Of a stretch of DNA of 64,000 nt, positions 8,307 through 31,310 are shown piece after piece. This DNA is from Isurus oxyrinchus (taxonomy: Eukaryota): contig JANJGN010000121.1 of assembly GCA_026770705.1 (NCBI GenBank), positions 1,116,001 through 1,180,000 of the forward strand, given 5' to 3'. The notes beneath the pieces are model-generated. The model did no database searches. It saw nothing but the letters and a program-made list of their open reading frames with translations, and was not told the DNA's origin. Position 1 is the stretch's first letter. Each line of letters begins with the position of its first letter. The position numbers and the translations under genes are program-made.

Positions 8307-11300
8307 CTAGAGAACACACAGAAAGAAATCATCACTGACTCTCCGCTTTCAATCTCTCACTCTGGCTGAACAATCAAGCTTCATATCACTGCAACATTTG
8401 CTGTAATATTGACCCATCCACTGGGATTCAATGTGGAATGAATGTTTTCATTGTAAACACTCTAAGAGTGGACAATCGGAACTTTCCCCTTAGCGTGGAA
8501 CATTGGTGAGAATGGATCATTGTGCTGTTGGACTCCCTGTCCAATGTTTCTCTCCATCGCTGTGTACAGGATTGTGCTGTAGAAAATTCTGGAAACGTTT
8601 AGTGCAGGGTGGAAATCCATCTCGGACGTGTGTGCGAATCGGGCAGGATCGAGATGGACTCCCCCACGGAGTTACACCCCCCGCTTAATAAACAGTTCCA
8701 ATCTTTACCCAGAGAGAGGGGAGAATGTGGAACTCACTCCCACAGGGAGTGGTTGAGGTGAACAGTATCGATGTATTTAAGGGGCAGGAGGGTCGGTAAC
8801 CAGAGGGACACAGATTGACCAACTGGAGGGGGAGATGAGGAGAATTTGTTTTGACAGAGCGAGTTGTTGTGATCTGGAAGGTGCTGCCTGAAAGGGCGGT
8901 GGAAGCAGATTCAATAGGAACTTTCAAAAGGGAAATTGGATAAACACTTGAAGGAAGAAGATGGGGGCAATGTGGAGTGGTGGTTAGTGGATCTGATTGG
9001 ATAGAACATTGAAAGACCTGGCACAGGCTCAATGGGCTGAATGGCCTCCTCCTGTGCTGTACCATTCTCTGCTTCCATGATCTCTCCCCCAGTTAGTAAC
9101 CACTCCAGATCCCTCTTGAAGGCAACAGAGAAACAGCAACCACCACACCCACTGACAGCACATTCCCGAAGATCCCGACTCTCTGGGAAAAGATGAACTC
9201 CCCAACATCCAGCCTATTCCTGCTTCCTGGAGAGTGTAAACCCTTCCCAGAGCGCGGATGAACCTTTCAATAAACTGTATTATCAAATCTACCATTTGAT
9301 ATATAAGTTAATTTTGATGACCTTACAGCATGTGTAGCAAATTGTGAAGTGAAGTTGGCTGAAAAGCTGGGAGGTGCAAGGTTAAGCACCACAGTGCCAC
9401 CACTGGTGGGAGGATGTAAAGACAGTGTGACGTTTACATAGGATGCCCCCATTATAAATAGGGTCATTGGACATGATGGCAAAACTGAACACTGGAAAGG
9501 TGAGAAAATGAAGTAAGCTTTTCACTAACAGGAAATCCCTTCCTAAACTTCCTTATCGCTCCCTTTCTCTCAGATACACAAAAAATTTGACACAGGGCAT
9601 TATAAGGAGGAGTTAGGACAGGCAAGAGTGAGGGATTAGGAAGCTTCTTAAAGGAGGGGAGAGATACACGGAGAGGTGGGGAGTATCTGTTGGAATCTTT
9701 GTGCATGTGAGTTTCTGGAATAGACTTTGTAATTTGGATATTCTTCGATAAATATGAATGGGAACACAAATCCCAGAATCCAGGAGAACTCTCCAGTGCA
9801 GTACTGAGGGAGGTCAGGTAACTCACAGGGGAGTGTGTACTACTGTGTTAGTGTGTGAGTGTGTCTTTCTGTGTGCTCATGAGTGTGGGATTGTGTGTGT
9901 GCATGCACTTTGGGTCTGTACATTTGTGAGTGCTTGTGTGTGTGTGTGGGAGAGCATCTGAGTATATGTGTTTGGAGATGAGAGAAATATTAAAGTCTGT
10001 GTACACTCACATTCCACAGTGATGGTTATGAACCCCTCCACTGCTCCATGTTCATTCTCTGCCACACACTGATATTCTCCAGTGTCCCTGGATGTAACAT
10101 GAGGAATCACCAACCACAGCTCATTGTTGGAACTTGTTCTGTTCATTGGGACATTAAGATGTCGCCACATCAGGTTAGAAGCTGGGGAGCTCTCGACAGA
10201 GCAGATTATCACTGCAGAATTCCACTCAATTATACTGATTGATGAAGCGTTAATCATATCTGGAGAAGTAATTGAGAGATTCCGTGGAGCGTCTAAAAAC
10301 AAATACAGATCAGTTAACTTACACTGACTGTGAAGCACTTTGAAAGACACTGAGAATGTGAAAGGTGTGATGTCAATGTAGGTTCTTTCACCACATAGCC
10401 CGTAATCCAGGCAGACACTTCAGTTCAGTATTGAGGGCGTGCTGCACTGTCAGAGGGTCAGTACTGAGGGAGTGCTGCACTGTCAGAGAGTCAGTACTGA
10501 GGGCGTGCTGCACTGTCAGAGGGTCAGTACTGAGGGAGTGCTGCACTGTCAGAGGGTCAGTCCTGAGGGAGTGCTGCACTGTAGGAGGGACAGTACTGTG
10601 GGAGCACTGCACTGTAGGAGGGTTACTGCTGAGATAAAACTGCACAGTCAGAGCGTCAGTTCTGATTGACCAGTGCAATGTTGGAGGAGCACTACTGAGG
10701 GATCATTACACTATTAGAGAGTCAGTAATGAGGGAGTGCTGCACTGTAGAAGGGTCAGTGCTGAGGAGGCAAACATGCTGTTATGTGTGTACTATAGGCC
10801 TCCTGTGATAATGTGGAGTGCCAGGTACCTTTAAGAGAATACAAGTGGATAAACCATGTGACAGTACTGACCAATCACTGGACAGTGTGGGCCACTGGTT
10901 AACTGTAAGTCTAGAGCTGGAGGTGGCTGTGGGAGCAGGCAAGGATTTAGTGCTCTGCCCTCTGTTACAATAAATAATCAGCTTGTTCTAATGTCGGTCT
11001 CTCTTGGTTATTGATAGCGAGCATCAGCTAAGAATAACTCAACAGGTCTGGCAGCTTCGGGGGAGAAGAAAAGAGTTGATGTTTCGAGTCCTCATGACCC
11101 TTCGACAGAACTGAGGTCATGAGGACTCGAAACGTCAACACTTTTCTTAGTGCAAGATGGAAATCCATCTCGGACGCGTGTGCGAATCGGGCAGGATCGA
11201 GATGGACTCCCCCACGGACTTACACCCCCCGCTTAATAAACAGTTCCAATCTTTACCCAGAGAGAGGGGAGAATGTGGAACTCGCTCCCACAGGGAGTGG

Positions 11301-14300
11301 TTGAGGTGAGTAGTAGCAAATTGGGAAGTGAAATTGCTTGAAAATCTGGGAGATGCAAGGGTTAAGTGCTACCGTGCCACCACTGGTAGGAGAGTGTAAC
11401 TACAGCGTGATGTTTACATAGGCAATCCCCATGATGAACAGGGACATTGGACATCATGTGCAAAATGGGCTCTGGAAAGGTGGGAACATGATGTAAGCTT
11501 TTCACCAACAGGAATTCCCTTCCTAAACCTCTCCACCTCTCTCTTACTCTCAGATACTCAAACAATATTTCACACAGATTCACAGAAGGAGGAGTTGGGA
11601 CAGATGCCTGGTCAAAGGGTTTGGTTTGAAGAAGATTCTTCAAGGGAGAGAGAGAGTTGGAGAGGCAATCAGTATCTGTAAGTATCTCTGTGCATCTGAG
11701 TGTCTAATAGAATTTGCAATTTCCATGTTCTTCCAGAAATATGAATGGGAACACAAATCCCAGAATCTACGTCAACTCTCCGATGCAGCACTGATGGAGG
11801 TCAGGTAACCCACGGGGGAGATGTGTTTGAGTGTGTTAGTTTGTGAGTGTGTCATTGTGTGTGCTCATACATGTGGGATTGTGTGTCTGCAGGTGTCTAT
11901 TTAGGTCTGTATATTTGTGTGTGTTTGTGTCATGATTCAATCTGAGAGAGATGTTGAAGTCTGTGTACACTCACGTTCCACAGTGATGGTTATGAGCCCA
12001 TCCACTGGTCCATGTTCATTCTCTGCCACACACTGATAGTCTCCAGTGTCCCCGGATGTAACGTAAGGAATCACCAACCACAGCTCATTGTTGGAACTTG
12101 TTCTGTTCATTGTGATATTCAGATGTCAGGGCAGGACTCAACAGACAGATCGCAGTTTTACCAACAGAAAGTGAACAACAATTTATACTTGATGGGAAGA
12201 GAGTGCTGATTGGTTGGCAAGTGGTCACTGATTGGAGGAGGTGTTGCCATGGAAAATAATGTGTGCGAGGTGTAAAGTTAAGACAGCTTGTCTCTTCATT
12301 CAGCAGTAATCAAATAAAGATCAGTTAACTTCTATCGACTGTGAAGCACTTTGAGAGGAATGAGAATGTGGACACTGAGAACAGGCTGCACTGTCAGAGG
12401 GTCAGCGCTGAGGGAGTGCTGATGTAGAATGAAGGATATCTCAACTTACATTGCACAGTTAGTACGAGGGTCTGCTCCGATGAAACAGATGGATATCTCA
12501 CTCTGCAGCTGAGAGTGTGTCCGTGGTGTTTGAGTGATGGGATCAGGGTCAGAACAGAAGTATAGGTCAGAGTGACACCATGCTGAGTTACAGTGTTTGA
12601 GACTGATCCAGGTACGTCAGTGGGAATGTCCCAGGTTAAGACAGGTGCTGCTGTTCCATTGCACGTTGTGTTGAAGGTGCAGCTTACATCCACACGCTTT
12701 CCTGCAATAATTTCAGCAGGGAATATCGTGGGTTTATCTGTGAAATCTAACAGACAGAGAATGGATCCTTTTAGAGAAATATAACGTGAAGCATCAGTTC
12801 AAATAGAAATCACAGTCCCACAAGAGAAAGCACTTTTACAAGGATGATATCAGAACTGAGAGGTTACAACGATCAGGAGAGAATTTCCTGCTTTGAGACT
12901 TTGGTGTTTCTGTCTCTCAGCTTAATACACGTTCACTCCGAGACACTTGAACTGATAATAGTGGGTGAGGGTGGTGGAGCAGACCAGAGTTTGGAGTGCA
13001 CTACCCCATCAGTCCCTCAGCAATCTGGGCCATTTATTACTTTGCAATTTGTGGGAGATTGCTGTGCACAAATTGGCTGCTGTGTTTCCCACTTTACAAC
13101 AGTAACTACAATTCAGGAATCAGCTCATTGGCTGTGAAGTGATTTGGTCCATGCTGAGATGGTGAAATGTGCTATAGAAATGTGAATATTTCTTCTATCG
13201 ATATGTCAGACTTCGAGACAGGATTAGAGAGATCGGTGCGAGTGGATAACCTGATAACACTGATGGACACAGTCAATACATTTAATCATTGATATTAAAG
13301 TGAGTATTAGATGTTGCTTTAGGACTGAACTGGAAGCTATCACCAGGTTATTGAGAATCAGACAGTGTGTTATAATAAGCTGTGTTTTGTGTTAATATGT
13401 AAACGGCACAGTTTGTGTTATTTCCCATTGAGTGTTGAATGTGAATTGTTGAGTAATTATAACACAGCACTTACCAGAAACATGAAGCTGGGTTACAGGA
13501 TAGTAGCTGTATCTATTTCCGCTGTCAAATTCTATTCTGAAAAAATAAGGTCCTGCATCTCCCCATCTGATGTTATTTATAATCAGGGAACAGTCGCCAT
13601 CTTTCAGGTCTCCAGACAGCCGGGTCCGATGGTGGAAACGTGGTAACTCATGACTGTGATCCTTGGAGTGAAAGGCTATAGACGATGTTCTCCATTCCTC
13701 ATTATTAAACCAGACTCCACCTCGCGGTTGGTTTTCCAGACACAATGGATAACTGTAATGACATGGAATCTGTACACACGAACCTTTCTGAGCTGTCACC
13801 TCTCGTGGAGTGTCACCTTTCCACTCTTGTGAGGGTTCAGCTGGGGAGAGAAATATCAATATTTAACTCTGGATGGTTTGTGGATCCACTGAACCCGATA
13901 TTTACAGATGTGGCTGAATTTGGAGGATGGTCAATACTGAGGAGAATGGCAACAAATTATTTTGGCAGGAAGAATAGTAAAACAGAATATTATTAAAATG
14001 GAGAGAGGCTGCAGAATGCAGTACAGAGGGATCTGGGTGTCCTGGTACATGAATCACAGAAAGTCAGCATTCAGGAACACCACGGAATGAGGAAGGCAAG
14101 TGGAATGTTGGCCTTTATTGCAAAGGGATGGAGTATAAAAGGAGGGAAGTCTTGCAACAGCTGCACAGGGCGTTGGTGAGATTGTAACAGGATCATTGTG
14201 TACAGGCAGTTCAGAGAAACTTCACTGGGCTGATTCCTGGGATTAAAGGGTTTGTCCTGTGAGGAAATGTTGAGCAGGTTGGGCCTGTATCCATTGGAGT

Positions 14301-17300
14301 TTAGAAGAATGAGTGGTGACCTTATTGAAACATATCCGATTCCGAGGGGGCTTGACAGGGTGGATGCTGGGAGGATGTTTCCCCCTCGTGGGGGAATCTA
14401 GAACCAGGGAGCACAGTTTCGGAATGAGGGCTTTCCCATTTAAGACTGAGATGAGGAGGAATTTCCTCTCTCAGAGGGGCACTAGCCTGTGGAATTCCCT
14501 TCCCCAGAGAGCAGTGGAGGCTGGGCCATTGAATAGACTCAAGGCTGAGTGAGGCAGGTTTTTGATCGACAAGGGAGTCAAGGGTTTGGGGGACAGGCAG
14601 GAAAATGGAGTTAAGGCCACAACCAGATCAGCGAGAGCAGGCTCGAGGGGCCGAATGGCCTGCTCCTGTTCCTATTTCTTATGTTCCTACATTCTTACCT
14701 TCTTAAAATATTAAAGCTGCAGAATAAACATGCAAGTGAATGACCCGCTCGACCCACCTTCCATCTGGGGGTCCCATGGGGAGGACCCTTCCTGAGCCAG
14801 ATCCACCAGCCAACATGGTCTAGATCCGTGCACAGGAGACACGGGTTGTGACAGGCCCTGTCTGTCCAATGGCTGGCTTTCAGCTGCCAAGGCCAGAGTA
14901 GTCCTTGCTAAAACTGGCTCAGGACAGGCCAGGACCCCTGTGCAGACCCCCTCCAGCGCTGCAGCCTCTGTACAAACCCCTCATGCGCTTGTGGAGAGAC
15001 ACAAACAAGGCTGCACATTACCCAGGAGAATCCCCTCTACGGACTAAGGGGCTGACTCATCACCTTAAACTCAGCAAATGAGGAGGCTCTCGCTCGGTAT
15101 CGGGGCTTGGCATTCGCTCAATAAAAATAATCAAATGACATTTTGGTCAGAAATCTAAGGAGGTTGTACATTCCCTCAAAAATAAGACTCGATCTGGGGT
15201 CGAGGGTCAAAGGGCAACAACTTATATTTACACAACAACTTTAACATGACCAATCACCCCAAAGTGCTACACAGGAGCGTCATAAAACAAAGTATGTCAC
15301 CCAGACACATGTGGCGATATTAGCGACAGCTGACCAAAAGAGGTCGGTGTTATGGAGAGATAGAGAGAAAGAGACAAAGAGACAGAGAGAGAGAGAGATA
15401 GGGAGAGGATTTGGGTGGGAATTCCAGAGCTTAGGGTCCCAGGCAACAGAAGGCACGGCCGCCAATTTTGGAGCGATAGCATCTGGTGATGGTCAAGATT
15501 CCGGAATTGGAGGAGTGCAGTGATCTCGGGGGGTTGTAGGGGCTGTACTTTGTACAGAGGCTGTAGTGAGGCTACAGAGGTAGGAAAGATTGGAGGGGCT
15601 GTAGGAGTTTACAGAGCCAGGGAGGGTTGTAGGGGCAGGATGGGGTTACAGATATAGGGAAGGTTGGAGGGGCTGGCGGAACTTACAGTGAAAGGAAGGG
15701 TTGTTGGGGCAGGCTGGGGTTACAGAGTTAGGGAACGTTGTTGGGTCTTGAGGAGCTTTGAGCGAAAAGGGGATTGTAGGGACTGTTGGACGTTAAAGGA
15801 TAAGGGAGGCATTAGGGGCATGAGTAGGTTACAGAGACAGAGGGTTTGTAGGGACTGGAGAAATTTACAGTGAAAGGGAGGCTTTAGGGGCAAAAGATAG
15901 TTACAGAGATAGGGAGGGTGGACGGGAATGGGAAATGTTATGGAGATAGGGGGTTTGTAGGTACAGGATTGGGTTACAGAGATAGGGACGTTTGTTGTGG
16001 CTGGAGGAAGTTACAGAGATAGAGAATGCTGTAGGTACTGGAGGAGGTTATCAAGATAGGGAGGGATGTAGGGACTGGAGGAGGTTATCGAGATAGGGAG
16101 GGCTGTAGGGATTGGAGGAGGTTACAGTGAGAAAGAGTGCTATAAGGACTGGGGGAGGTTATAGAGATAGGGAGGGCTGTAGGAACTGTAGGAGGTTATA
16201 GAGATAGGGAGGGATGTAGGTACTGGAGGAGGTTATAGAGATAGGGAGGGCTGTAAGGACTGGGGGAGGTTATAGACATAGGGAGGTCTGTAGGGATTGG
16301 AGGAGGTTATAGAAATAGGGAGGGATGTAGGTACTGGAGGAGATTATAGAGATAGGGAGGGCTGTAGGGACTGGAGTTTATAGAGATAGGGAGGGTTGTA
16401 GGGACTGGAGGAGGATACATAGATAGAGATTGCTGTAGGGACTGGAAGGGGGTTTAGAGATAGGGTTTGTTGGAGTGGCTGGAGAATGGTGCAGAGAAAG
16501 GGAGGGTTGTTGGAGCTGGAGGAAGGTTCTGAGATAGGGGTGGTTTCTGGTCACTGAAAGAAGTTACAGAGATAGGGAGGGTTGTAGGGGCTGGCGGAGG
16601 AGGAGGAGGAGATTACAGAGATAGTGAGGAAACAAAGATGAAAATTTGGACATTGAGACTTTGCTTGACCAGGAGCCAGTCTCGGTCATCGAGCAGAGCG
16701 GGTGATAAGGGAATGGGACTTGGTGTGAGTAAGGACGTGGTCAGCAGTTTTGGATGGCCTCAAGTTTATGGAGTGTAGACCGTGTGTTGGAACAGTCGAG
16801 TCTGGAGGTAATGAAGGCGTGGATGAGGGTTTCAGCAGCAGATGAGCTGAGACAGGGTGAAGTCGTACGATGTTACGGAGGTGGAAATAGACGGTGTTAG
16901 TGAGGGCGCAGATATGAGGCCGGAAGCTCATCTCAGGATCAAATGGGACAACAAAGCTGTGAACAGATTGGCTTCAATCTCAGAGAGCTGCCAGGGAGAG
17001 GAATGGAGTTGGTAGCGAGGGAACAGAGTTTGGAGTGGGGAATGAAGACAATGGCTTCAGTCTTTCCAATATTTAATTGGAGGGAATTTCTGCCCATCCA
17101 GTACTGGATGTCGGATAAGCAGCCTGATAATTTAGCAGCAGTGGAGGAGTCGAGAGAGGTGGTGGTGAGGTAGAGCTGGGGATCCTCAGTGGACAGGTGA
17201 AAACTAATACTGTTCAGATGATGCTGCAAAGCCATTGCAAGTGATTCTCTGGCTACGATGAGATGGATAAGAATGGAGCCAGGGGAGAGCAGTCCCACCC

Positions 17301-20300
17301 AGCTGGACGACAGTGGAGAGGTGTTGGAGGAGGATGGTGTGGTCGAGCGGGTCAAAGGCTGCAGACAGATCGAGAAGGACGAGGAGGGAAAGTTGACCTT
17401 TGTCACAGTCACACAGGATGCCATTTGTGACCTTGATAAGAGCTGTTTCAGCACAGTGGCTGGGGTGGGAACCTGATTGGAGGGATTCAAACATGGAGTT
17501 CCGGGAAAGATGGGAACGGATTCGGGAGATGGAAACACGTTCAAGGACTTTGGAGGGGAAAGAGAGGCTGGAGATGGGACAGGGGTTTACACGGACAGTG
17601 TGAGGGGTGGAAGGTGTAGTGGGGAGGAGATACTTCACTCAGCGGGGAGGTGTCATCACCCCTCAGCTCGGTTTACGTTACAGCTATGATGTGGATTCAA
17701 TCACACACAATAAGCTCATGGATCTGGGAGCAGAAATAGACAAATCATTAAAAATAGTGACGCTGGTTAACACGGCCAAAAAACAAGCAAATCAAACACT
17801 ATTATTTCCCATTGAGTGTTGAATGTGAATTGTTGAGTAATTATAACACAGCACTTACCAGAAACGTGAAGCTGGGTTACAGGGTAATAGTTATGGCTCG
17901 GACCATTGCCAAATTTTATCGTGAAAAAATAAGGTCCTGCATCTTCCCGTCTGATGTTGTTTATAATCAGGGAACAGTCACCATCTTTCAGGTCTCCAGA
18001 CAGCCGGGTCCGATGGTGGAACCGTGGTAACTCGTGACTGTGATCCTTGGAGTGAAAGGCTATAGACGATGTATGCCATTTGTCCCTTCTCATTTTCCAG
18101 ATTCCAACACGTGTTTTCTCTAACAAATGTGATGGGTAATTGTAATTACATGGAATCTGTACACACGAACCTTTCTGTGCTGTCACCTCTCGTGGAGTGT
18201 CACCTTTCCACTCTTGTGACAGTCCAACTGGGGAGAGAAATATCAATATTTAACTCTGGATGGTTTGTAGATCCACTAGACTCGATATCCACCCCCTCCA
18301 TCACTGGGGCACAGTGGCTGCAGTGTGGACCATCTACAGGACACACATGGAACTCCCCAATGTTTCATAACGGATGGAAGAGAATCCTGGACACAGGAGT
18401 GGACAAGTTCATTCTACATTGGCTCATGGTCCTCAGGACCCTGTTTGTGCACAAGCCTGCTATCCAACAGAACTGAAGTTGGGGAAAATCCATTTGGAAT
18501 TCCACTGTCCAGGGCATTGTGTTAACTTGTTGAATTTGTTTTAAATCTAACATATAATTTTGGTCTGTTGCCTTAAATGGAGTGTAACTGGGAGTCAGGT
18601 TAATTAGGAATTTTAGGAGTTATTATAGCAGTCATTGTAGTCTTATGTATGTGCTTGAAATCTTTCATTTTGATGACAAATATTTTAATTTATTGTTTTA
18701 AATCTCTGAAAGTTTGGTGGAGTCATTGCTTCTGAATTCAGTGCACACATCTCAAAATAAATACAAATTGCAAAATCATTATGATAGTGTGACCAGGTTT
18801 CTCTCAGGGACTTGGTCTGCCTGGCACACATCACCTGCCAAGTGATAACACTGTTATAATATGCCTTTCAGGGATAGCAGCATGACATCACTCGAGGGGA
18901 AGTGTGTCATGTGATTTTTAGGAACTGGGGTTGGCTTAAGTAAGTTCTATGTGTATTTCTGTGTGTTAGGCATAAGGTCTATCTTTAAGGTATATATTTA
19001 TGTTTAATTTTAATTTGTATTTCTGTATTTGGGTGTTGAGAAAAGGGGGAGCTTGAGCTAAAAATAAGCCAGCATTCCTTTGAGGTTTTAAGACTCTTGC
19101 AGGAAGTCAAAACAAATACAAGGTGTAAGAAACTGTGCTGTTGCCTAGTAACAGTGATCCAGAGGGAAGGACCCACAGAGACCGAGAAAAACAGAAAAGT
19201 ACTTTCAGTTCTGTTGAAAGGAGTTGCCAGGAGAAGCAGCAAAGGAGCGGGACAGATAGTCAGTCCCAAAGTAAAGAAGAAGCCAAAACCATCGAGTGGA
19301 ACAGGAGAAAGGGCCCAAGAAAACCTTCTAGTCAAATCTGGAAAAGGCCCTGTTAAGTGAAGTTAAGAGTGAGGAGCAGAAGAAGGCTTCAAGCTTAAAG
19401 GGAGAAAGCAGCAGGACACAGGCCTAAAGCAAAATAGGCTTGTGAGAAGCCAGAAGATCCTAGGAGACACCACAGGTTGGTGACTCATTACTACGGCCAT
19501 GTGAAGCCATGGTGTTCCATTGACACGGCTGAGCATTGGAGAGACAGGGCGTGGAAGGAAGGCTGAATGCACGTGGCGATCCAGGGGGCAGGAACATGGG
19601 AAGGAGAGTTTGAAATAGTGAAAGTGGACCCTTGTGGAAGGTGTCTGAGTGAAAGTGTCATGTTGGAGAAGATTCCAAAGAGAGCACTTGGCTCTCTTTG
19701 AGATTGGAAACCCTCATATGGATATCTCAGTTCAGTGAGACTGGTTGGCTCACAGTGTAACAAGCGTCTGGGGTCAGATGAGGAGGGAGACATAGCATTT
19801 GTTTCAAGTGGGTTCTGTCACTTGATTTTAGAATGTGGTGTCCCTGACCACAGGTCGTCTATTGGTTTACATGGACTGTGTACTTAGTGTGAACATGAGA
19901 GTATAAGATAGCTATTGTAACTTGCGTGATCTTTATGAATCTGTATATATCTGTAAATGTATAGGTCTGGGTGAAGGAGAAATGTCATATAGTTTGTCTT
20001 TCCTAGTTTAATAAATGTTTTATTCTTTAGTTAGAAGTTCATCAGATGACTCCTGTGACTCTGTTCAGTAGCCGCACTCCACATTCCTAAATAAAAAATA
20101 AAAGTTAGGACCTATCAAGCTGAGTTCCACCCTGGGATCTGACTTGCCCAGTAGCAACATCAGCTGGGATGATAACACCATCCAGTCCAAGTTTCACTTT
20201 GGCCTGTGAGCAGAACACAGCTCACACACTTTGGCTGCAGGTGTCTCCCAGCTTTCTATCCTTGTATATCTGTTCTCATGTCCCTATTCTAAATAACTGA

Positions 20301-23300
20301 ACCCACAATGTATTTACCCAATTCCGTATCAGTGGCTGGTGCCTTTATATCATTATAAAAACACAACATGGTGATCAGCGGTGGCCAAACATTCAGGCAG
20401 CAAGATTCAGTACAGGTATGACGTGGTGAACAACCTTAGATCGAGCTAGATGACATGAGTCATGCTTCGACGCTTTGGTCAGACCACAACAGAGACACAG
20501 CATCAGAGAGGGTTGAAATCACAGTGTACTGACTGCTCAGGAAACCTTTGAAGACACAGTGATGGGAAAGAGCTCAAGTAAAGAGCTGGGGAGCAGACGG
20601 ATCCCTCATGGTGAGAACTGCTAGATACGACCAAAGCCTATAGCATTGAAGAGCTACTCAAGGATGGACATAAATACGAAGTGATCCTCGCAGGTCAACG
20701 AAGATTACAGGTCCTCAGTACAACATCAATTGTTGACACACTCACTAGAACATCCAAACCTAGTGAGAAGTGTGGAAGGTGTGGCCTTCTGCAGGCACCA
20801 AGGAAATGCCCAGCTTTCCACCAATCCTGCAAGGCTTGTGGCAGAAAGGGCCATTGACAGCGGCAGGGCACTAGAGCAAAGGCTCATGCAGCTACAAAGA
20901 GCCGTGCGCTGATCCAAACAGACCCTACACAACGGGGAACCTTCAAGCAATAAGAATGACCATCCACTATCCCATCAGGAACATATACATGTGGTGACTG
21001 ACAAACCAGGAAATGGCGATGATGTACACGGTGAGACGAGGAGTGGTGATCGATATTCCACCTCTCACACATATCCTGACGTGGCTTGCCAATAAATTGT
21101 GGATTGTTGTCTTTAAAGATCTCTCTGGGCACATCAAATAAACTGAAAATGTCCCATAGGGGTGGGATTTTCTGGCCCCACCCACTGCCAGGATTGTCCG
21201 GTCCGGCCGAAAGCCAATGTTTGTCCAATCTCCCACGGCAGGGCCCATCATGACTGTGCCGGAAAACCCCAGCCTAGAGTTTGTGCAGCACTTGTGCTCA
21301 ACGTATTGTACAATTGTTGAACAATTTCAAACCTTTTACACCATCAATCTCACGGAGAACAGATGCTGTCACATCACCCGCACTATTGGCCAAGATTCCA
21401 ATTTTCTGCCCTGAGAAAGTTGCAACCTCCCCTTTATTGACCAAGATTGACACAGGGGCAAGTACCAACATTCCCCTCCCACAGCCCACCCCAGCAAATT
21501 TTCAAAGACATGTATCCAAGGACATGGGAGTCCATGGGAAAACCTACTGCTGTGTACAACACTTCACCAACTCCATGTGCAGAATCCATAGTCCTGGGGT
21601 GCAAGTACAATCAATCCTCCTGGGTGTCACAGATGTTCTACATCGTGGAGACTAAAGGCTGAGCAATTGCAAGTCTACCGGCATGCGGTGACCTCACCCT
21701 AGAGACAATCCATGGAATCTGTCAGACCTCACATGGGTCAAACTCAGAAACTACCCCAGCAACTCAGTTCATGGACATAACATTGAAATATGCAGAAAGT
21801 TTCAACAGTATTGTCAGTTTCAAGGGAGCTGCAACATTACACCTGCAGGAGAATGCAAGTCTGTCAATTGATCCAGTACATTTAGCACAAGAGAAATGCC
21901 AGCAGCTACAAGAGGGAACAGTGAAAAATTCGGCAGGAACTGTGGAAATATCATTGAAAGGGTGGCCTGATTCAACTTGACCTCATCGAGATAAGCGAGG
22001 TATCTCCCAGGGAGTCTTTTTTAATGGCAGGCAGGGCATCATACCGGCACATTTGTGATCCTATATTCTTCAACAACTTCATCCCTCACACATGGGCACA
22101 GATCAGACAAGGAGACTCACAAGAGATACAGTCCCTGGCCGGGTATGAACAATGACCTTGAAGTTGTTGTAGGGAAGTTCGAGGCTTGTCAAGAGGATGA
22201 GCCAAGTCAACACAAAGAACCACTGATTCCACAGGAAATTCCTGCCTATTCTTAGTCCAAAATCACATCTGAATCCTTTCATGTCCATGTCACTGACTTC
22301 ATCGTCATCGTCGACAGCTTTACCAGATATCCCGTTATTCAAAAATAGCACAACACACCGAGCACAACTGGTGCACACACTCTAAGCACGATTTTCAGAT
22401 TATTTGGTGAACCTAGGGACATGATTACAGATAATCTGGAATATCAATCACACTACTTCTTCTCCTCATTACCCCAGATCTAACAGCCTCGCTGAATGAA
22501 TGATGCACACAGTGAAATCCCTAATTCTCAAATGTAGACAGGCCAAGCAAGATCCACACATTGCAATGTTACATCTGAGATCGACACCTACAACTGCAAC
22601 TTTGTTAAATTCATTCATGGGATGTGGGAGTCACTGGCGAGGCCAGGATTTATTACCCATCCCTAATGTAAGAGTCAACCACATTGACGTGGAGTCTGGA
22701 GTCACATGTCGGCCAGACAATTTTGTTCCCTACAGGGCACTGGTGAACCAGGTGGGATTTCCAACAATGGTTTTGTGGTCATCACTAGACTTTGAATTTC
22801 ATATTTTTATTAAATTCAAATTCCATCATCTATTATGGCCGGATTTGAACCCATATCCTCAGGACATTACCCTGGGTCTCTGAATTACTCATCCAGCAAC
22901 AATACCACTACACCATCACCTCACCTTATTCCATCACTGACAGAGATCATGTTTGGTGTGCCAGTAGTGACCAATTTCGCTACTCTTACCCATTCTACTC
23001 TCTCAGAAACCAGAGGGCAGCTTTTAAAACTACAAGAGAAGATAAGGAATGTTCATGATAAAAATGGAGGTGCAGAGTTGCCAAGTTTAGAGTTGGGACA
23101 AGTTCACATCCAGGATCCCACAGAAGGTTCATGACCACCAGCCGAGGTGACAAGGATTTGTTCAGAACCAAGGGCCTATGGAGTCAAACACACAAGGGCA
23201 CAGCGGTGAGGCGGAACCGAGGATAAATCAGATCCATTCCCGCTCCTATTCCATCGAGGAGAAGATCCCACATGAAATCAGGAACAACATCCAAGGGTGA

Positions 23301-24492
23301 CAATCCCACAGACCACTGTGAGCAGTTAAAGACACCTCCAGACAAGGTAACCAGCACAAGATCTGGGTGGACCAGAAGGTTAAATCCACACTTTAGAGAG
23401 TCAAATATTCAACAGTTCCATGCACTTATGTAATTGTCAATAAATATGAACATGATATGAGAAACCGCTTGTTCCCTGTCCTTCTCAAAGATCCATTCCT
23501 GCAGCGGGAGCCTGAAGTGTTACTGATAAGAGATTTAATTTATCGGATTGTGGAATGATCCGGAACTGAAGGAAGCCATTTGGCCCATCGAGCCTGTGCT
23601 GGGCCTTTGAAAGATCTGTCCAATTAGTCCCACTCTCACCTCTGCTCTCTCCCCCACAGCCCTGCAAAATGTCCCCTTCAAGTATTTATCCAGTTCCCCT
23701 TCTGAAAGTTCCTGTTGAATCTGCTTCCACCGCCCTTTCAGGCAGTGAGTCAATGGTCTCTCTCTGAGCTGCAAAGTGATAAGTTTCAATGAAATATAAA
23801 CTCTGCAGCAGATCAGAAACAATCATGATAACTCAGAATATTTGACAGTTTTACATACAGACAGCTTTGCCTCCCTTCTCTCTATCAGTTATCTTGCTAT
23901 CTTATCGAATTTTCTAGCATGGTGAGAATGGACAGGAAGTGTGACGCTGAACTGCCTGTCTAATCTAAGAGCTTCTGTGTTGTCTTCATGGGAAATTCTG
24001 ATGAAAATCAGCAAGAGAGAAAAATTTCAGGGCATTGATATCGGAGTGCTTGCATCAGGATAGACTTCATCCCCCAGTTTTTATCCCTGCTTCTCTATTC
24101 AGCCGATCGCTCCCCTGTCACTCACTGACCTACACTGGCTCCCAGTCCAGCAATGCCTCAATTTTCAAAATCTCTTCATTGATTCCTTATCCCTCCATTC
24201 TCCATCTCTAATCCCTATCACTGTCACCTCCTCCAGCCCTGAAACCCTTTGAGGTCTCTGCTGTCCTGCAGTTCTGCTGTCAGACAGGGAGTCAATGTAT
24301 ATCAGTGAGCACAGGGGTGATGGGTGAATGGGACGTGGTGTGAGTTTGTACACTGACTCACTGCTGAATCAGTTCCCTATCAGAGCTCCATAAGAATGTT
24401 CTTTTACAAAGACTATTAGCCATAAGTCTGTCCAAGCTGACGATGTTATTACCTTGGAGAAGTGACAGGAGGAAGTAAGATTTCCCAACCAT
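8167..24492 (-). CDS. Gene model S2: short-tailed Siglec-like receptor, join 24453-24492, 17859-18227, 13475-13840, 12450-12746, 10011-10292, 8167-8306 (497 aa: SP-V-V-C2-C2-TM); alternative leader at 26644-26683
   Basis: All listed exons are open, GT/AG-bounded and phase-1 compatible; total 1494 nt. Confidence 0.7.
10011..10292 (-). CDS. S2 membrane-proximal C2-set Ig exon (94 codons)
   Basis: APRNLSI...IICSVESSPASNLMW...GEYQCVAENEHG; 282 nt, phase 1-1. Confidence 0.9.
10425..10765 (+). repeat. 33-bp minisatellite
   Basis: About 10 copies of the same unit as 5440-6723. Confidence 0.9.
11975..12127 (-). pseudogene. C2 pseudo-exon (5' half and acceptor lost)
   Basis: HLNITMNRTSSNNELW...TITVE with intact donor; the upstream part is replaced by unrelated sequence with an in-frame TGA. 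Confidence 0.8.
12450..12746 (-). CDS. S2 Siglec domain-2 C2-set exon
   Basis: FTDKPTIFPAEIIAGKRVDVSCTFNTTCNG...SCRVRY; extra BC-loop Cys typical of Siglec D2; 297 nt, phase 1-1. Confidence 0.92.
13475..13840 (-). CDS. S2 V-set exon V2 (essential Arg present)
   Basis: GSCVQIPC, GDCSL and DAGPYFFRIEF: Siglec B-E disulfide pattern, no F-strand Cys, Arg codon 13536-13538; 366 nt. Confidence 0.92.
13900..14690 (+). mobile_element. CR1 LINE 3' fragment
   Basis: Decayed RT end, FKTEMRRNFLSQR, and GGGGCCGAATGGCCTGCTCCTG...TTCTTATG tail. Confidence 0.88.
15525..16625 (+). repeat. ~37-bp purine-rich minisatellite at an L2 3' end
   Basis: Unit GAGATAGGGAGGGCTGTAGGGACTGGAGGAGGTTATA, about 29 degenerate copies. 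Confidence 0.85.
16640..17600 (-). mobile_element. L2-type LINE RT fragment
   Basis: AETALIKVTN...LLVLLDLSAAFDPLDHTILLQ; LQLNIGKTEAIVF. Confidence 0.88.
17859..18227 (-). CDS. S2 V-set exon V1 (essential Arg replaced by Thr)
   Basis: Open 369-nt phase 1-1 exon; DAGPYFFTIKFGNGPSHNY; ACG at 17920-17922. Confidence 0.88.
18520..20176 (+). mobile_element. Adjacent solo-LTR-like repeats
   Basis: TGT...ACA-bounded segments (18519-18849, 18852-20176) with AATAAA; related sequence at 500-1212 and, inverted, at 43100-43290. Confidence 0.5.
20617..23400 (+). mobile_element. Decayed Ty3/Gypsy element (gag, protease, integrase pieces)
   Basis: KIDTGASTNI aspartic protease motif; WPGMNNDLEVVVGKFEACQ integrase zinc-finger region; SNSLAE*MMHTVKS core; many stops. 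Confidence 0.8.
24453..24492 (-). CDS. S2 proximal signal-peptide exon MVGKSYFLLSLLQ
   Basis: ACAATGG Kozak context, 40 nt, AAG|gtaat donor. Confidence 0.85.
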
Positions 24493-24565
24493 TGTCCACT
24501 CCCAGATATGCCTTTAGCTTCTGACTCTTAAACTGTGAAAGAGAAAGGAGTTAATGAGACCTCAC

Positions 24566-25083
24566 CTCTTGTCCGACAGCTCTCAAGAGATCAGAACTGC
24601 TTTTAGACAATGTCTTCACAGACTAATTTGGTTCTCTGTGGGATGATAGGTGCTCTGCAGAGAGTTAAAAAGCTGTAAAAAAATAAATCAGTGAAGGACT
24701 TGCATTTCTATAGCACCTTTCACCACCTCAGGATGTCCCAAAGCTCATGTCCCTGCTCTTCCCTCATCCTTTGAGCTAGAAAGATGTTCTGTACAACAGA
24801 CCTGAGCCTCACACCCTGATCTTAATAATCAGTAGAAATCTTTCAAAGGCATCAATCATTGGAATCTGTCTTTATAAAGTCACAACATCAACAAAGGATG
24901 GTGTTGGTGGTGGAAGTGAATTCCAATCGTTCCGTTACTTACCCAGGACCTGTCCGACTGCTCGCCTGGGGAGGAACTGCCCACACGCTCTGCTTGGGCT
25001 GAATGACCTCTTCCTGTGCTGCTCCCTCTGTGTGTTTAATTAGAAAGGGTGGATGTGTCACTGTGAGACAAAATGAGGAAGTT
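24566..25083 (-). promoter_or_regulatory. S2 proximal leader: UTR exon 2 (24566-24654), exon 1 (donor 24943), PU.1-type site 25070-25083
   Basis: Paralogous to 4692-5209 with splice sites conserved. Confidence 0.7.
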
Positions 25084-25312
25084 GGATCAAAGTGACAGAG
25101 CAGCTCCTGTTTTGAGATGCTGGTAAACTGTTAACCGTTTGTGTCCTGACCCTGTGGTGATATTTCTGCTCACAGGTGGACAGTCATTGACCAGGAGTTT
25201 CTCCTTTGGGTCAGTGGGTTTCACAGCCAAATTCAGGGGGTCAGAACATTGTGGGGTTCAAGACCCGATTCAGGGGACGTCTGCCCCACACAGTAGACTG
25301 AAACTCCCCAGT

Positions 25313-25527
25313 GTCAGTACTGAGCAAGTGCTACACTGTTGGATGGTCATTACTGAGCGAGTGTTTCACTATTGTAAGGTCAGTACTGAGGGAGATCTCC
25401 ACTGTTTGAGGGTCAGTACTGAGGGATTGCTGCACTGTCAGAGGGACATTAATCAGGGAGTGCTGCAATGTTGGAGGATCAGTACTGAGGGAGTGCTGCA
25501 CTGTTGGAGGGTCAGTATTAAGGTGCT
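25313..25527 (+). repeat. 33-bp minisatellite (degenerate)
   Basis: About 6 units. Confidence 0.8.
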
Positions 25528-25679
25528 GATTTACAAGACAGGACAATGGATTAGGAGCCCTCAGAACTCCCCCCATTATCACCGTCATGAATCACTAATT
25601 AGCCTAACATTCCTGTCTGCTCTTCAACACAGCTGATTGGTTAATCTGATTCAATCTGATTGGTGCACTTTGTATGTTC

Positions 25680-25858
25680 ATTGTCTAAGGAATCTCTTTG
25701 GATCCTCATTGTCTAAGGAATCTCTTTGGATCCTCATTGTCTGAGGAATCTCTTTGGATCCTCATTGTCTAAGGAATCTTTTTGGATCCTCATTGACTAA
25801 GGAATCTCTTTGGATCCTCATTGTCTATGGAATCTCTTTGGATCCTCATTGTCTAAGG
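25680..25858 (+). repeat. 28-bp tandem repeat x6
   Basis: TTGTCTAAGGAATCTCTTTGGATCCTCA; three copies also at 60385-60473. Confidence 0.9.
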
Positions 25859-26643
25859 GATTATTTCTGATCCAAACCCCATATTGTTGTATTGTTGATT
25901 CCGATGCAGCATTGTAGACTGACTTGTCCCCAAGCTCAGCGCTGACCCTACTCCAGCAGACACTGTGAAACACACTAACAAAGTGCCTCTAGCCTGAGCT
26001 CTGCATGTGTCGAGAGAAAGACAAATATACAAACTGAATATTGACCCATTTACACACGGACAGCTTTACCTTCCTTCTCTCTTTCAGTTATCTTGCTCCC
26101 TTATTGAAGTATCTAGCAAGGTGAGAATGGACAGGAAGTGTGACACTGAACAGCCTGTCTATTCTAGGAGCTGCTGTGTTGTCTTCATGGGAAATTCTGA
26201 TTAAAATCAGGAAAAGACACAAATTTCATTCCTTTGCTATCAGAGTCCAAGCATCAGGATAGACTTCATCCCCCAGTATTTATCACTGTTTCTCGACTCA
26301 ACACCTCACACCCTCTGCCACTCGCTGACCTGCACTGGCTCCCAGTCCAGCAGAGCCTCGAGTTTAAGACTCTCATCCTCAATTTCCATTCCCTCCATTC
26401 CTCTTCTCCAATCACTTTCTCCTCCAACCATGCAAACCTCAAAGTCCTCTGCTCTCCTCCAATTCTGCTGTCAGACAGGGAGTCAGTGTATATCAGTGAG
26501 CACAGGGGTGATGGGTGAATGGGACTTGGTGTGAGATTGTACACTGGCTCACTGCTGAATCTGTTCCCAATCAGAGCTCAATAAGAATTATGTTTTACAA
26601 AGGTGATTAGCCATAAATCTATCCGAGCTGACAATGATATTAC

Positions 26644-26683
26644 CTTGGAGAAGTGACAGGAGGAAGTAAGATTTCCTGATCAT
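26644..26683 (-). CDS. S2 distal (alternative) signal-peptide exon MIRKSYFLLSLLQ
   Basis: ATG at 26683, 40 nt, AAG|gtaat donor. Confidence 0.8.
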
Positions 26684-26749
26684 TGTCCACTCCCAGGTAT
26701 TTCATTGGTTCTCAAGCTGTGAAAGAGAAATGAGTTAACGAGACCTCAC

Positions 26750-27267
26750 CTCTTGTCCGACACCTCTCGAGAGATCGGAACTGCTTTTAGACAATGTCTT
26801 CACAGACTAATTTCATTCTCTGTGGGATGATAGTTGCTCTGCAGAGAGTTATAAGGCTTTAAGAAAGTAAAACAATGAAGGACTTGCATTTCTATATCAC
26901 CTTTTACCTGCTCAGGACACCCCAAAGCTCATGTCCCTGCACTTCCCTCATCCCTTGAGCTAGAAAGATGTTCTGTACAACAGACTTGAGCCTCACACCC
27001 AGATCTCAATAATCAGTAGAAATCTTTCAAAGGCATCAATCATTGGAATCTGTCTTTATAAAGTCACAACATCAACAAAGGACGGTGTTGGTGGTGGAAG
27101 TGAATTCCAATCGTTCCGTTACTTACCCAGGACCTGTCCGACTGCTCGCCTGGGGAGGAACTGCCCACACGCTCTGCTTGGGCTGAATGACCTCTTCCTG
27201 TGCTGCTCCCTATTTGTGTTTAATTAGAAAGGGTTGATGTGTCACTGTGAGACAAAATGAGGAAGTG
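26750..27267 (-). promoter_or_regulatory. S2 distal leader: UTR exon 2 (26750-26838), exon 1 (donor 27127), PU.1 site 27254-27267
   Basis: Paralogous leader cassette with AAAATGAGGAAGTG intact. Confidence 0.7.
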
Positions 27268-27374
27268 GTTAGTACCAAGTTAGAAAGCAACTCTTTGCCT
27301 CACACAGTTAGAAAACTGTTAACCCTTTGCGTGCCAAGAATGTGGCTGAAGGGCCATCGACTGTTCACATGCAA

Positions 27375-29473: not shown

Positions 29474-29590
29474 TTATAAATTCCCATAAACAGAATCCTC
29501 AGCAAATTCACAGTTTGCGTAAAGATCATCATCTGTATCAGGATTGACTCCGCGGTTAGATTTCATTTCCACATCCTTCTCATCTTTCTT
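29474..29590 (-). CDS. S3 terminal cytoplasmic exon with two YxN motifs
   Basis: tttctattacag|AAG; KKDEKDVEMKSNRGVNPDTDDDLYANCEFAEDSVYGNL*; not in the ORF track. Confidence 0.75.
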   Translation of the reverse strand, partial: KKDEKDVEMKSNRGVNPDTDDDLYANCEFAEDSVYGNL

Positions 29591-29686
29591 CTGTAATAGA
29601 AACAGAAATGATCAGAGTGACAATCAGAGTGATCAGTGTTTAGTATTATTGATCCAAATCGAAAATTCCACCCACAATAGATACAT

Positions 29687-30282: not shown

Positions 30283-30415
30283 TGTTGGGTGTGAGTTTGG
30301 TTGGGTTTGGGAGTGACTGTATAAAACATTGCAGATACAGGACTGGAGCAGCCATATCAATAACCAGGCTACTGGAGCAGCTGAGAGGCTGGGGATCCTG
30401 TGGTGTGTGACTCAC

Positions 30416-30520
30416 CTGATTCCTCAAAGCCCAACCACGCTCACAGTTTTCATAAACAGGACCTCGATATTCATCAACACGGTGGTTTGATTTGATTCCT
30501 GCTTTCCTCTCGCCTCTCTT
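30416..30520 (-). CDS. S3 internal cytoplasmic exon (phase 0-0) with YEN motif
   Basis: ctctattacag|AAG ... CAG|gtgagt; KRGERKAGIKSNHRVDEYRGPVYENCERGWALRNQ; paralog of exon 29474-29590. Confidence 0.72.
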
Positions 30521-30865: not shown

Positions 30866-31310
30866 CAGAAAGATGTTCTGTACAACAAACCTGAGCCTCA
30901 CACCCAGATCTCAATCATCAGTAGAAATCTTTCAAAGGCATCAATCATTGGAATCTGTCTTTATAAAGTCACAACATCAACAAAGGACGGTGTTGGTGGT
31001 GGAAGTGAATTCCAATCGTTCCGTTACTTACCCAGGACCTGTCCGACTGCTCGCCTGGGGAGGAACTGCCCACACGCTCTGCTTGGGCTGAATGACCTCT
31101 TCCTGTGCTGCTCCCTCTGTGTGTTTAATTAGAAAGGGTGCATGTGTCTCTGTGAGTCAAATCAGGAATTGGGGAACAATTGTGAAAACCCTTTCATTGA
31201 AACGTAGGGACTTAGTGTTGTGTTGTAAGCAAACTGTTAACCCTTTGTGTCCTGACTCTGTGACGTGATTCCTGTGTAAAGCTGAGCAGTCGTTGAAAGA
31301 GTTTCAATTC
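30866..31310 (-). promoter_or_regulatory. Orphan copy of Siglec promoter and exon 1 (donor 31032), without exon 2 or signal exon
   Basis: Near-identical to 24778-25070 plus upstream homology to 25125-25200. Confidence 0.75.

What the first reader, a model, noticed from the sequence alone, without database searches (positions are those of the whole stretch)
13840..27267. Nested gene capture: an S1-type promoter+leader+V module sits inside the leader-V intron of an S4-type gene
Seen: the intron behind the distal leader (25527-25665, 25680-26012) matches the S4 leader-V intron (58647-58785, 60385-60627), and V2 matches the S4 V. The block 17800-25300 (proximal leader, Gypsy/LTR-filled intron, V1 of the GIWKMR class) instead matches S1 (189-5210). 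Paralogous flanks stop about 57 nt after V1 and about 50 nt before V2. Inference: exon-module shuffling gave S2 two promoters and selectable N-termini (V2 alone, V1-V2, or V1 alone) on one constant C2-TM part, a miniature variable-head/constant-tail locus.
Basis: partly seen in the sequence, partly recalled or inferred. Interest (0 to 1): 0.8.

Follow-up and report, generated by a model that had tools for sequence, protein, structure and literature searches.

The report
Shark Siglec gene with doubled 5' unit
A shark sialic-acid-lectin (Siglec) gene carries two start units and two sugar-binding-type head exons in the order start-start-head-head, and RNA shows the second head is optional, but the extra start unit looks more like leftover from gene-cluster rearrangement than a designed switch.

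Summary
The described layout is real, but it lies on the minus strand. The order is: distal promoter-like core and leader (L_A, ATG 26683), a 0.5-kb intron stub shared only with S4, a 33-bp satellite, a proximal core and leader (L_B, ATG 24492), a retroelement-filled intron colinear with S1, V1 (18227-17859), a 4-kb TE-filled intron, V2 (13840-13475), then C2-1 (12746-12450).

Both leaders are intact. An RNA loose end gave their position, and great-white-shark annotated proteins carry the same leader.

RNA contigs show:
- V1 spliced straight to C2-1, skipping V2, in 2 of 4 runs laid.
- An 11-letter hint of V1 joined to V2.
- A 12-letter leader-to-V1 junction that fits L_A and L_B equally.

No leader-to-V2 junction was listed, and use of the distal promoter remains untested.

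V1 groups with the S1 V and V2 with the S4 V (14:0:1 informative sites). The leader blocks themselves are star-like (16:11:8).

"Capture by insertion" cannot be told apart from an orphan 5' gene fragment left upstream of an S1-type multi-V gene. I favour the orphan fragment.

The scan has already noted multi-V Siglec genes elsewhere in this genome (s1-871168, s1-864300), and has read this same stretch as s1-871188. Interest is moderate.

The parts
30867..31305 (-). L_C: third, truncated copy of the promoter-like core, with no leader exon behind it
   Evidence: 30867-31172 matches 26962-27268 at 96.1%, and 30867-31305 matches 24778-25201 at 86%. Similarity ends about 40 nt after the core.
26962..27268 (-). 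L_A promoter-like core (distal), with a TATA-like motif at 27062-27050 and a donor-like GTAAGT after 27127
   Evidence: the roughly 300-nt core is 95-100% identical between L_A, L_B, S1 and S4, with L_C equally close, while flanks are 86-88%. Promoter function is not tested.
26644..26683 (-). L_A leader coding part (MIRKSYFLLSLLQ, phase 1, donor GTAATA). A possible acceptor would make the exon start at 26716.
   Evidence: The same leader is joined to a V domain in the Carcharodon models P0001 and P0002.
25523..26012 (-). Intron stub shared only with the S4 leader-V intron: piece a (25770-26012, with a 28-nt tandem repeat at 25678-25858) and piece b (25523-25694)
25310..25523 (-). 33-bp satellite (about 6 units) at the junction between the S4-like stub and the S1-like upstream region. 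The same satellite lies upstream of the S1 leader block (5427-6725).
24778..25104 (-). L_B promoter-like core (proximal), with a TATA-like motif at 24878-24866
24453..24492 (-). L_B leader coding part (MVGKSYFLLSLLQ, phase 1, donor GTAATA). A possible acceptor would make the exon start at 24532.
18228..24452 (-). L_B-V1 intron, colinear with the S1 leader-V intron and filled with retroelement debris lying on the + strand
   Evidence: colinear blocks at 85-95%; weak Integrase_H2C2 hit at 22025-22252, E 0.004, below Pfam's cut-off.
17859..18227 (-). V1 exon (369 nt, phase 1 at both ends), a Siglec-type V-set domain with Thr in place of the ligand-binding Arg (YFFTIK)
   Evidence: Its borders are fixed by the RNA joint and a loose end.
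13841..17858 (-). V1-V2 intron. It holds the 57-nt shared flank (17802-17858), an RT fragment (17207-17638), a 37-nt tandem repeat (15568-16600), a TE copy (14091-14616) and the 49-nt shared flank (13841-13889).
13475..13840 (-). V2 exon (366 nt, phase 1 at both ends), a Siglec-type V-set domain that keeps the Arg (YFFRIE). It is skipped in some RNA.
12450..12746 (-). C2-1 exon, the first constant exon. Its acceptor is joined to the V1 donor in RNA.

Best explanation
S2 is one transcribed Siglec gene on the minus strand. It belongs to the multi-V type that recurs in this shark genome.

Its mRNA starts with a 13-codon leader exon and continues into V1, an outer head that has lost the sialic-acid Arg. 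V2 keeps the Arg and is an optional cassette exon. After V1 or V2 comes the constant part, beginning with C2-1. So the protein has either one head (V1) or two (V1-V2).

The 5' end is doubled. The proximal unit (L_B) belongs with V1 and is colinear with S1. The distal unit (L_A plus 0.5 kb of S4-like intron) is most likely a 5' gene fragment. A deletion or partial duplication in this tandem, conversion-prone array would have left it upstream.

L_A may still fire as an alternative first exon. If it does, it should splice to V1, whose acceptor is the same as V2's and comes first. That would give the same mature protein, differing only in leader residues 2-3. If the L_B leader exon were included in an L_A transcript, the frame would close after one codon.

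Shown: the map, the intact exons, and the V1-to-C2-1 splice. Weakly shown: the V1-to-V2 and leader-to-V1 splices. Inferred: the history, and the role of L_A.
For: - **V1-to-C2-1 splice.** The joint 12746/17859 has GT..AG ends on the minus strand. It is seen in 2 of 4 runs laid: X6 (one 258-nt contig with 100 nt on the short side) and X1 (2 contigs). It is absent from the DNA-sized run X17.
- **Same locus.** One of the contig's 5 differences from the window (17909 C>T) is also the letter in X17 DNA, so the contig comes from this locus.
- **Loose ends in X1.** V2's 5' edge is followed by 11 letters of a V1-type exon end. V1's 5' edge is followed by 12 letters that match the ends of L_A and L_B exactly, and S1 and S4 with 1 mismatch.
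- **Leaders.** Both have ATG, a hydrophobic core and a GTAATA donor. Carcharodon models carry the same leader joined to V.
- **Acceptors.** V1 and V2 are identical over the 33 nt before their acceptors.
- **V types.** V1 groups with the S1 V and V2 with the S4 V at 14:0:1 informative sites.
- **Debris.** A third, truncated core (L_C) sits upstream, showing that 5' debris accumulates here.
- **Mosaic identity.** The same pair of copies ranges from 65 to 100% per 100 columns, as gene conversion would give.
- **Scan notes.** They report S1 with three V exons, and other genes with two or six V exons under one leader. I did not check these.
Against: - L_A's leader-exon window is 97-98% identical to S1 and S4, while L_B's is 92-93%. 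A dead relic should not be the better kept of the two.
- The S4-like stub (92-95%) and V2/C2-1 (93%) are about equally close to S4. That is what the nested-insertion history predicts.
- The decisive comparison could not be made. It needs S1's intron after its first V, which lies outside the window.
- The V1-V2 and leader-V1 junctions rest on one contig each, with 11-12 letters.
- Only 15 of 332 joints and 24 of 926 loose ends were printed. An unseen leader-to-V2 or V2-to-C2-1 joint is therefore not excluded.
- All reads evidence is from assembled contigs, so there are no starts, no strand and no levels.
Confidence: 0.5

Rival explanations
1. An S1-type module (promoter, leader, intron, V1 plus 57 nt) was inserted into the leader-V intron of an S4-type gene, about 50 nt before its V. 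The two promoters now select among V2-only, V1-V2 and V1-only heads on one constant part.
For: - The S4-only intron pieces lie directly behind L_A.
- V2 and C2-1 are closest to S4, at 93.1% and 93.3%.
- The V quartet is 14:0:1.
- The flank limits at +57 and -49 are sharp.
- Both leaders are intact, and L_A is well kept.
- V1-only RNA is seen, and V1-V2 RNA is weakly seen.
Against: - The leader blocks are star-like (16:11:8). L_A is no closer to S4 (87.8%) than to S1 (89.4%).
- The V2-to-C2-1 intron is only 79% identical to S4's, so the 'outer gene' does not have one age.
- About 500 nt of S4-like intron (58160-58643) is missing before V2.
- No leader-to-V2 junction was listed.
- V1 has a full acceptor identical to V2's, so nothing couples promoter choice to V choice.
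- Multi-V genes under one leader are reported elsewhere in this genome (unchecked). They explain V1-V2 without any capture.
Confidence: 0.22
2. The L_A/L_B adjacency is an assembly artefact. A collapse or false join within the 33-bp satellite at 25310-25523 has put the 5' part of one gene in front of another gene.
For: - The junction lies exactly at a satellite that occurs at six or more places in the window.
- No read evidence was obtained for 25.2-26.1 kb, because the single read-laying run covered 12300-18299.
Against: - There is no N run within 13-28 kb.
- S4's copy of piece b is not followed by satellite. A collapse would therefore need an unseen satellite in the lost gene.
- The part of the layout that could be tested holds up in RNA from two studies: V1 upstream of V2 upstream of C2-1 on one transcript.
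Confidence: 0.1
3. L_B plus V1 is a separate, truncated leader-plus-V pseudogene lying in the intron. The working gene is L_A-V2-C2.
For: Short leader-plus-V models exist in the Carcharodon annotation: P0001 at 139 aa and P0002 at 174 aa.
Against: - V1's donor is spliced to the C2-1 acceptor in RNA of 2 of 4 runs laid.
- V1 is joined to a leader.
- The V1 frame and both its splice sites are intact.
Confidence: 0.03

Closest known systems
Primate Siglec-12 / Siglec-XII (two V-set domains)
   Same: It is a Siglec with two N-terminal V-set domains ahead of the C2-set domains. The human form has lost the essential Arg in the N-terminal V (R122C); I saw passages of PMC6288428 on this. Here V1, the outer head, also lacks that Arg, while V2 keeps it.
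   Different: - This is a shark gene from a family in which two to six V exons per gene are reported by the scan.
- V2 is skipped in some RNA.
- The 5' unit is doubled.
- That human SIGLEC12 has one-V and two-V splice forms is my recollection only. No call checked it.
CD33-related Siglec clusters of mammals (tandem arrays shaped by duplication, gene conversion and pseudogene fragments)
   Same: It is a tandem array of paralogues on one strand with mosaic identity, hybrid 5' regions and orphan fragments. The best solved-structure matches are Siglec-5, CD33, sialoadhesin and Siglec-8.
   Different: Orthology to any mammalian Siglec is not shown. The behaviour of the mammalian clusters is recalled, not tested here.
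Variable-first-exon loci (clustered protocadherins, UGT1A)
   Same: Several variable 5' parts are spliced to one constant 3' part. More than one promoter-like unit lies upstream of shared exons.
   Different: - In those loci each variable exon is itself a first exon, with its own promoter and no acceptor (recalled).
- Here V1 and V2 are internal exons with identical acceptors and need a separate leader exon.
- The observed variation is cassette skipping.

Membership tests
Siglec family | N-terminal V-set Ig domain of the Siglec type | tested here: met
   Pfam V-set and Ig_CD22 hits for V1, V2 and the S4 V, all above cut-off. The best PDB matches are Siglec-5, CD33, sialoadhesin, Siglec-8 and MAG, with E 1e-13 to 1e-9.
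Siglec family | Essential Arg in the YFFR.E motif of the V-set | tested here: met
   V2's YFFRIE aligns with Siglec-5's YFFRVE. V1 has Thr there (YFFTIK), so V2 meets the feature and V1 does not. That this Arg is the essential one is taken from passages of PMC6288428 and from recollection.
Siglec family | C2-set domains, a transmembrane segment, and a signalling tail or charged TM | tested here: inconclusive
   C2-set_2 and Ig_3 exons lie downstream. There is a hydrophobic 21-mer candidate near 8298 on the minus strand. No S2 counterpart of the ITIM-like tail ORF at 44197-44442 was found by tblastn.
Siglec family | Binds sialic acid | not testable with these tools
   This needs a binding assay.
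Tandem-V Siglec (Siglec-12-like layout) | Two V-set domains in one mature mRNA | tested here: inconclusive
   In one contig of X1, V2's 5' edge is followed by 11 letters of a V1-type exon end. The frames are compatible, phase 1 to phase 1. No long contig spans V1-V2.
Variable-first-exon locus (Pcdh/UGT1A type) | Each variable exon is a first exon with its own promoter and no splice acceptor | tested here: not met
   V1 and V2 both carry a polypyrimidine tract plus AG, identical over 33 nt, and start in phase 1. A separate leader exon supplies the ATG.
Variable-first-exon locus (Pcdh/UGT1A type) | Promoter choice decides which variable exon is used | not tested
   The only leader junction seen (12 letters) fits both leaders. 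There are no 5'-end data.

The most novel reading that the evidence does not exclude
S2 is a two-promoter, two-head lectin gene in which promoter choice is coupled to head choice. The distal leader would give a V2-first, sialic-acid-binding receptor. The proximal leader would give receptors capped by the Arg-less V1. One constant stalk and membrane part would thus be switched between a binding and a masked or re-targeted state. It would be a small-scale analogue of variable-exon loci, inside an innate immune lectin of a cartilaginous fish.
Probability: 0.1. Interest if true: 0.7.

Novelty: new variant of a known kind. Interest (0 to 1): 0.4.

Why it matters
Shark Siglec clusters are hardly described. 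Three full-text searches turned up no paper on their gene structure.

The locus gives a worked example of how a tandem immune-lectin array builds receptors with one or two heads from cassette V exons. The outer head has lost the canonical sugar-binding Arg, a parallel to primate Siglec-12/XII.

If the distal 5' unit proves active, the gene would also show how rearrangement debris can be re-used as an alternative promoter. If it does not, the region is an ordinary product of unequal exchange in a gene cluster, and annotators should be wary of it.

Tried and rejected
1. **First leader guesses were wrong.** An ATG in the conserved core (MIDAFERF...) has a donor in the wrong phase. An ATG at 26049 spans a deletion junction. 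A phase-1 ATG...GT scan found no conserved candidate. The true leader came only from the RNA loose end.
2. **The 87-aa + strand ORF in the core is not coding.** It is open in all five copies, but 12 of its 15 variable sites change the residue. It has no Pfam hit.
3. **No known RNA family.** Rfam gave 0 matches at gathering score for 13000-31500.
4. **Dating the blocks by identity failed.** I tried this to choose between insertion and orphan fragment. Identities are mosaic, at 65-100% per 100 columns. S2 versus S4 ranges from 79% (V2-C2-1 intron) to 95.5% (piece a).
5. **The 470-nt TE-like piece is not informative.** It follows the leader block in S4, S1 and L_B. L_A keeps its first bases, so L_A lost it by deletion and did not branch earlier.
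6. **Looking for S1's downstream intron failed.** Two look-ups by sequence in the scan's notes gave nothing.
8. **The protein word search was limited.** With V1 alone (122 aa) it scored 3 of 3 candidates, none from this locus. Longer models lie outside its length range. I did not run the big representative search, because the family is not in doubt. I ran no further search on V2.
9. **An X1 loose end at 13080 (255 letters) is irrelevant.** It has no match in the window. It resembles the neighbouring repeat-like stretch, so I took it for another repeat copy.
11. **Supplementary files of papers were not requested.** The whale-shark paper's Supplementary file 9, which lists Siglec families, may bear on how widespread these genes are.
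Full report
**What is there**

The window holds a tandem array of Siglec-type Ig genes, all on the minus strand.

The V exons hit Pfam V-set and Ig_CD22, and the following exons hit C2-set_2 and Ig_3. The nearest solved structures are Siglec-5, CD33, sialoadhesin, Siglec-8 and MAG.

The only proteins the word search returned for V1 (3 of 3 candidates) are shark models. Two are from Carcharodon carcharias (77% and 76% identical) and one is from Rhincodon typus (67%). The S4 V is 115/121 identical to the Carcharodon model P0002. The genome is therefore a shark, probably a lamniform or a close relative.

**Observation check**

- 25523-25694 matches S4 58643-58814 at 92.4%.
- 25770-26012 matches S4 60385-60627 at 95.5%.
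- These two pieces ("b" and "a") match nothing else in the window. In S4 they are separated by about 1.6 kb of extra sequence.

From 25523 downwards the region is colinear with S1 in five blocks:

| S2 | S1 | identity |
|---|---|---|
| 23273-25523 | 3401-5636 | 85.5% |
| 21743-21866 | 3070-3192 | 92.7% |
| 20614-21219 | 2444-3050 | 94.9% |
| 19422-20616 | 503-1651 | 92.1% |
| 18049-18542 | 1-502 | 89.1% |

The junction is a 33-bp satellite (25310-25523), which also lies upstream of S1's leader block.

V1's downstream flank is shared with V2 and S4 for exactly 57 nt. V2's upstream flank is shared for about 49 nt. No N run lies between 13 and 28 kb.

**Exon anatomy**

The real leader exon could not be found by eye or by a phase-1 ATG...GT scan. 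It came from RNA. A contig of run X1 that ends at V1's 5' edge carries 12 further letters.

The reverse complement of those letters occurs four times in the window (0.71 expected by chance). It is exact at 26657-26646 and 24466-24455, and has one mismatch at 4592-4581 and 61674-61663, all on the minus strand. Each hit ends a 13-codon ORF that stops in phase 1 at a GTAATA donor:

| unit | leader peptide | ATG | last exon base |
|---|---|---|---|
| S1 | MIGKSYFLLSLLQ | 4618 | 4579 |
| S4 | MIGKSYFLLSLLQ | 61700 | 61661 |
| L_A | MIRKSYFLLSLLQ | 26683 | 26644 |
| L_B | MVGKSYFLLSLLQ | 24492 | 24453 |

The Carcharodon models begin with the same leader joined to a V domain.

The downstream exons are V1 at 18227-17859 (369 nt), V2 at 13840-13475 (366 nt) and C2-1 at 12746-12450 (297 nt). 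All are phase 1. V1 and V2 are identical over the 33 nt before their acceptors.

About 450 nt upstream of each leader lies a roughly 300-nt core that is 95-100% identical between copies, while its flanks are 86-88%. A fifth, truncated copy of the core (L_C, 30867-31305) has no leader exon behind it.

The core's + strand ORF is not coding: 12 of its 15 variable sites change the residue. No Rfam family matches 13000-31500. Whether the core is a promoter, a non-coding first exon, or both was not tested.

**RNA**

One search found runs. One laying was done on 12300-18299 with X1, X4, X6 and X17, all held as assembled contigs.

- **V1 to C2-1, skipping V2.** A joint from 12746 to 17859 skips 5112 nt, with CT..AC ends, which read GT..AG on the minus strand. 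X6 shows it in one 258-nt contig with 158 nt in V1 and 100 nt in C2-1. X1 shows it in 2 contigs with 18 nt on the short side. X4 and the DNA-sized run X17 lack it, so 2 of the 4 runs laid have it.
- **Locus of origin.** The X6 contig has 5 differences from the window in its V1 part and none in C2-1. One of them (17909 C>T) is also the letter in X17's DNA. The contig therefore comes from this locus and not from a paralogue.
- **V1 to V2, weak.** In X1, V2's 5' edge (13841) is followed by 11 letters equal to the end of a V1- or S4-type V exon. V2's own end differs by one base. One contig supports this.
- **Expression contrast in X1.** Contigs on V1, V2 and C2-1 have depth figures of 270-720, against 13-38 for intron contigs. 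This fits RNA, though the tool warns that contig depth cannot rank parts of a gene.
- **Not seen.** No leader-to-V2 junction and no V2-to-C2-1 joint are among the rows printed. Only 15 of 332 joints and 24 of 926 loose ends were printed, so this is not evidence of absence.
- **Leader identity.** The 12-letter leader junction cannot tell L_A from L_B.

**Which part is of which type**

Among columns shared by all four V sequences, 14 informative sites group V1 with the S1 V and V2 with the S4 V. The two other groupings get 0 and 1.

V1's private differences (39 sites) cluster in two patches, alignment columns 135-218 and 370-407. Elsewhere the exons are nearly identical.

At protein level V1 and V2 are 78% identical. 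V1 has Thr where V2 and Siglec-5 have the Arg of YFFR.E.

For the leader blocks the picture is star-like. Informative sites split 16 (L_A+S4 | L_B+S1), 11 and 8. Pairwise identities run from 86.9 to 90.1%, and L_A is slightly closer to S1 (89.4%) than to S4 (87.8%).

Identity along the blocks is mosaic, at 65-100% per 100 columns. Between S2 and S4 it ranges from 79% in the V2-C2-1 intron to 95.5% in piece a. That pattern is expected from gene conversion. It forbids dating the pieces.

A 470-nt TE-like piece follows the leader block in S4, S1 and L_B. L_A has largely lost it by deletion and keeps only its first bases.

**History**

Two histories give the present map.

An S1-type module was inserted into an S4-type gene's leader-V intron.
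- **D.** An S1-type multi-V gene (L_B-V1-V2-C2...) has an orphan 5' fragment of an S4-type gene (L_A, a, b) upstream of its promoter. A deletion or partial duplication left it there.

D needs one breakpoint, b|satellite at 25523. It takes the +57/-49 flank limits as the borders of an older V-exon duplication.

For D:
- L_C is a second orphan 5' fragment.
- Scan notes report that S1 has three tandem V exons and that other genes in this genome have two or six V exons under one leader. I could not check these notes.
- About 500 nt of S4-like intron is missing before V2.

For N:
- a, b, V2 and C2-1 are all about 92-95% identical to S4.
- L_A's leader-exon window is better kept (97-98% to S1 and S4) than L_B's (92-93%).

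The decisive comparison is S2's V1-V2 intron against S1's intron after its first V. It needs sequence just outside the window. I put D near 0.5, N near 0.2, a false join at the satellite near 0.1, and the remainder on other histories.

**How it most likely works**

The gene makes a leader-V1-C2... receptor and, in some tissues or individuals, a leader-V1-V2-C2... receptor. V2 is a cassette exon.

V1, always outermost, lacks the canonical Arg. The two-head form therefore carries the only canonical sialic-acid site in its inner head.

If L_A fires, its donor meets V1's acceptor before V2's identical one. The expected product is then the same mature protein.

If the L_B leader exon were taken in through its AG at 24533, the frame would close after one codon. 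I checked this in a script that prefixed the leader's last base to that exon. Such transcripts would be unproductive, or would restart at L_B's ATG. These last points are inference.

**Comparison with what is known**

The nearest known layout is primate Siglec-12/XII, with two V-set domains and, in humans, loss of the Arg in the outer V. I saw passages of PMC6288428 on this.

The resemblance to variable-first-exon loci (protocadherins, UGT1A; recalled, not tested) fails on a defining point. Here the variable exons are internal exons with acceptors.

[quoted passage not shown] I read only listings, plus one passage of PMC8455134.

An earlier follow-up in this scan (s1-871168) states that automatic annotation already predicts multi-V shark Siglecs.

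**Limits**

- All reads evidence is from contigs.
- Promoter activity is untested.
- The species is unknown to me.
- S2's 3' part was only sketched: C2 exons at about 9.9-10.3 kb, a truncated C2 copy at 11.8-12.1 kb, a TM-like stretch near 8.3 kb, and no counterpart of the ITIM-like tail at 44.2-44.4 kb.
Exons were searched one by one.

Noticed in passing
window 30867-31305 (-): A third copy of the promoter-like core (L_C) is cut off about 40 nt after the core and has no leader exon. It is 96% identical to L_A's core. It lies inside what another note calls the tail region of S3.
   Followed up: partly
window 4906-5166, 24780-25040, 26964-27224, 30869-31129, 61971-62231: The roughly 300-nt core is 95-100% identical between copies, while its flanks are 86-88%. 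This points to concerted evolution or strong constraint on a non-coding element. It holds ETS-like ACTTCC motifs (named from recollection), a TATA-like TTTATAAAG, and a donor-like GTAAGT.
   Followed up: partly
window 26703-26701 (L_A) and the matching place in S1 (about 4640): An out-of-frame upstream ATG lies 20 nt (L_A) to 22 nt (S1) before the leader ATG in L_A and S1, but not in L_B or S4. It would open a short overlapping upstream ORF that runs out of frame into the V exon.
   Followed up: no
window 5427-6725, 10421-10766, 25310-25523, 33704-34102, 37673-37893, 44624-45843: A 33-bp satellite recurs throughout the cluster, in both orientations. It sits at the L_A/L_B junction, so it is a candidate substrate for the rearrangements.
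   Followed up: partly
window 13475-13840 (-): V2 has an extra Cys (YPLCLEN) and a Trp in IRWGD that the S4 V and V1 lack. Its first codons also differ from those of first-position V exons (AEPSQ versus VGLSQ), as expected for an exon that now sits second.
   Followed up: no
window 11821-12127 (-): There is a truncated copy of the repeated C2 exon between C2-1 and the next full C2 exon (9836-10310). It is 80-93% identical to the S4 stalk exons and is probably a pseudo-exon.
   Followed up: no
window 58968-59083 / 59327-59442 and 59562-59797 / 60550-60788: The S4 leader-V intron holds a 116-nt inverted repeat (97%) and a 240-nt inverted duplication (93%). These make up part of the 1.6 kb that separates pieces a and b in S4 but not in S2.
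   Followed up: no
window 44197-44442 (-): A tail ORF carries ITIM-like ILYANI and TEYTQI motifs. tblastn finds no counterpart in the S2 region, whose TM-like stretch is near 8298.
   Followed up: partly
window 25678-25858: A 28-nt tandem repeat (6.5 copies, 94% matches) sits inside piece a. It has more copies here than in S4's copy of the piece.
   Followed up: no
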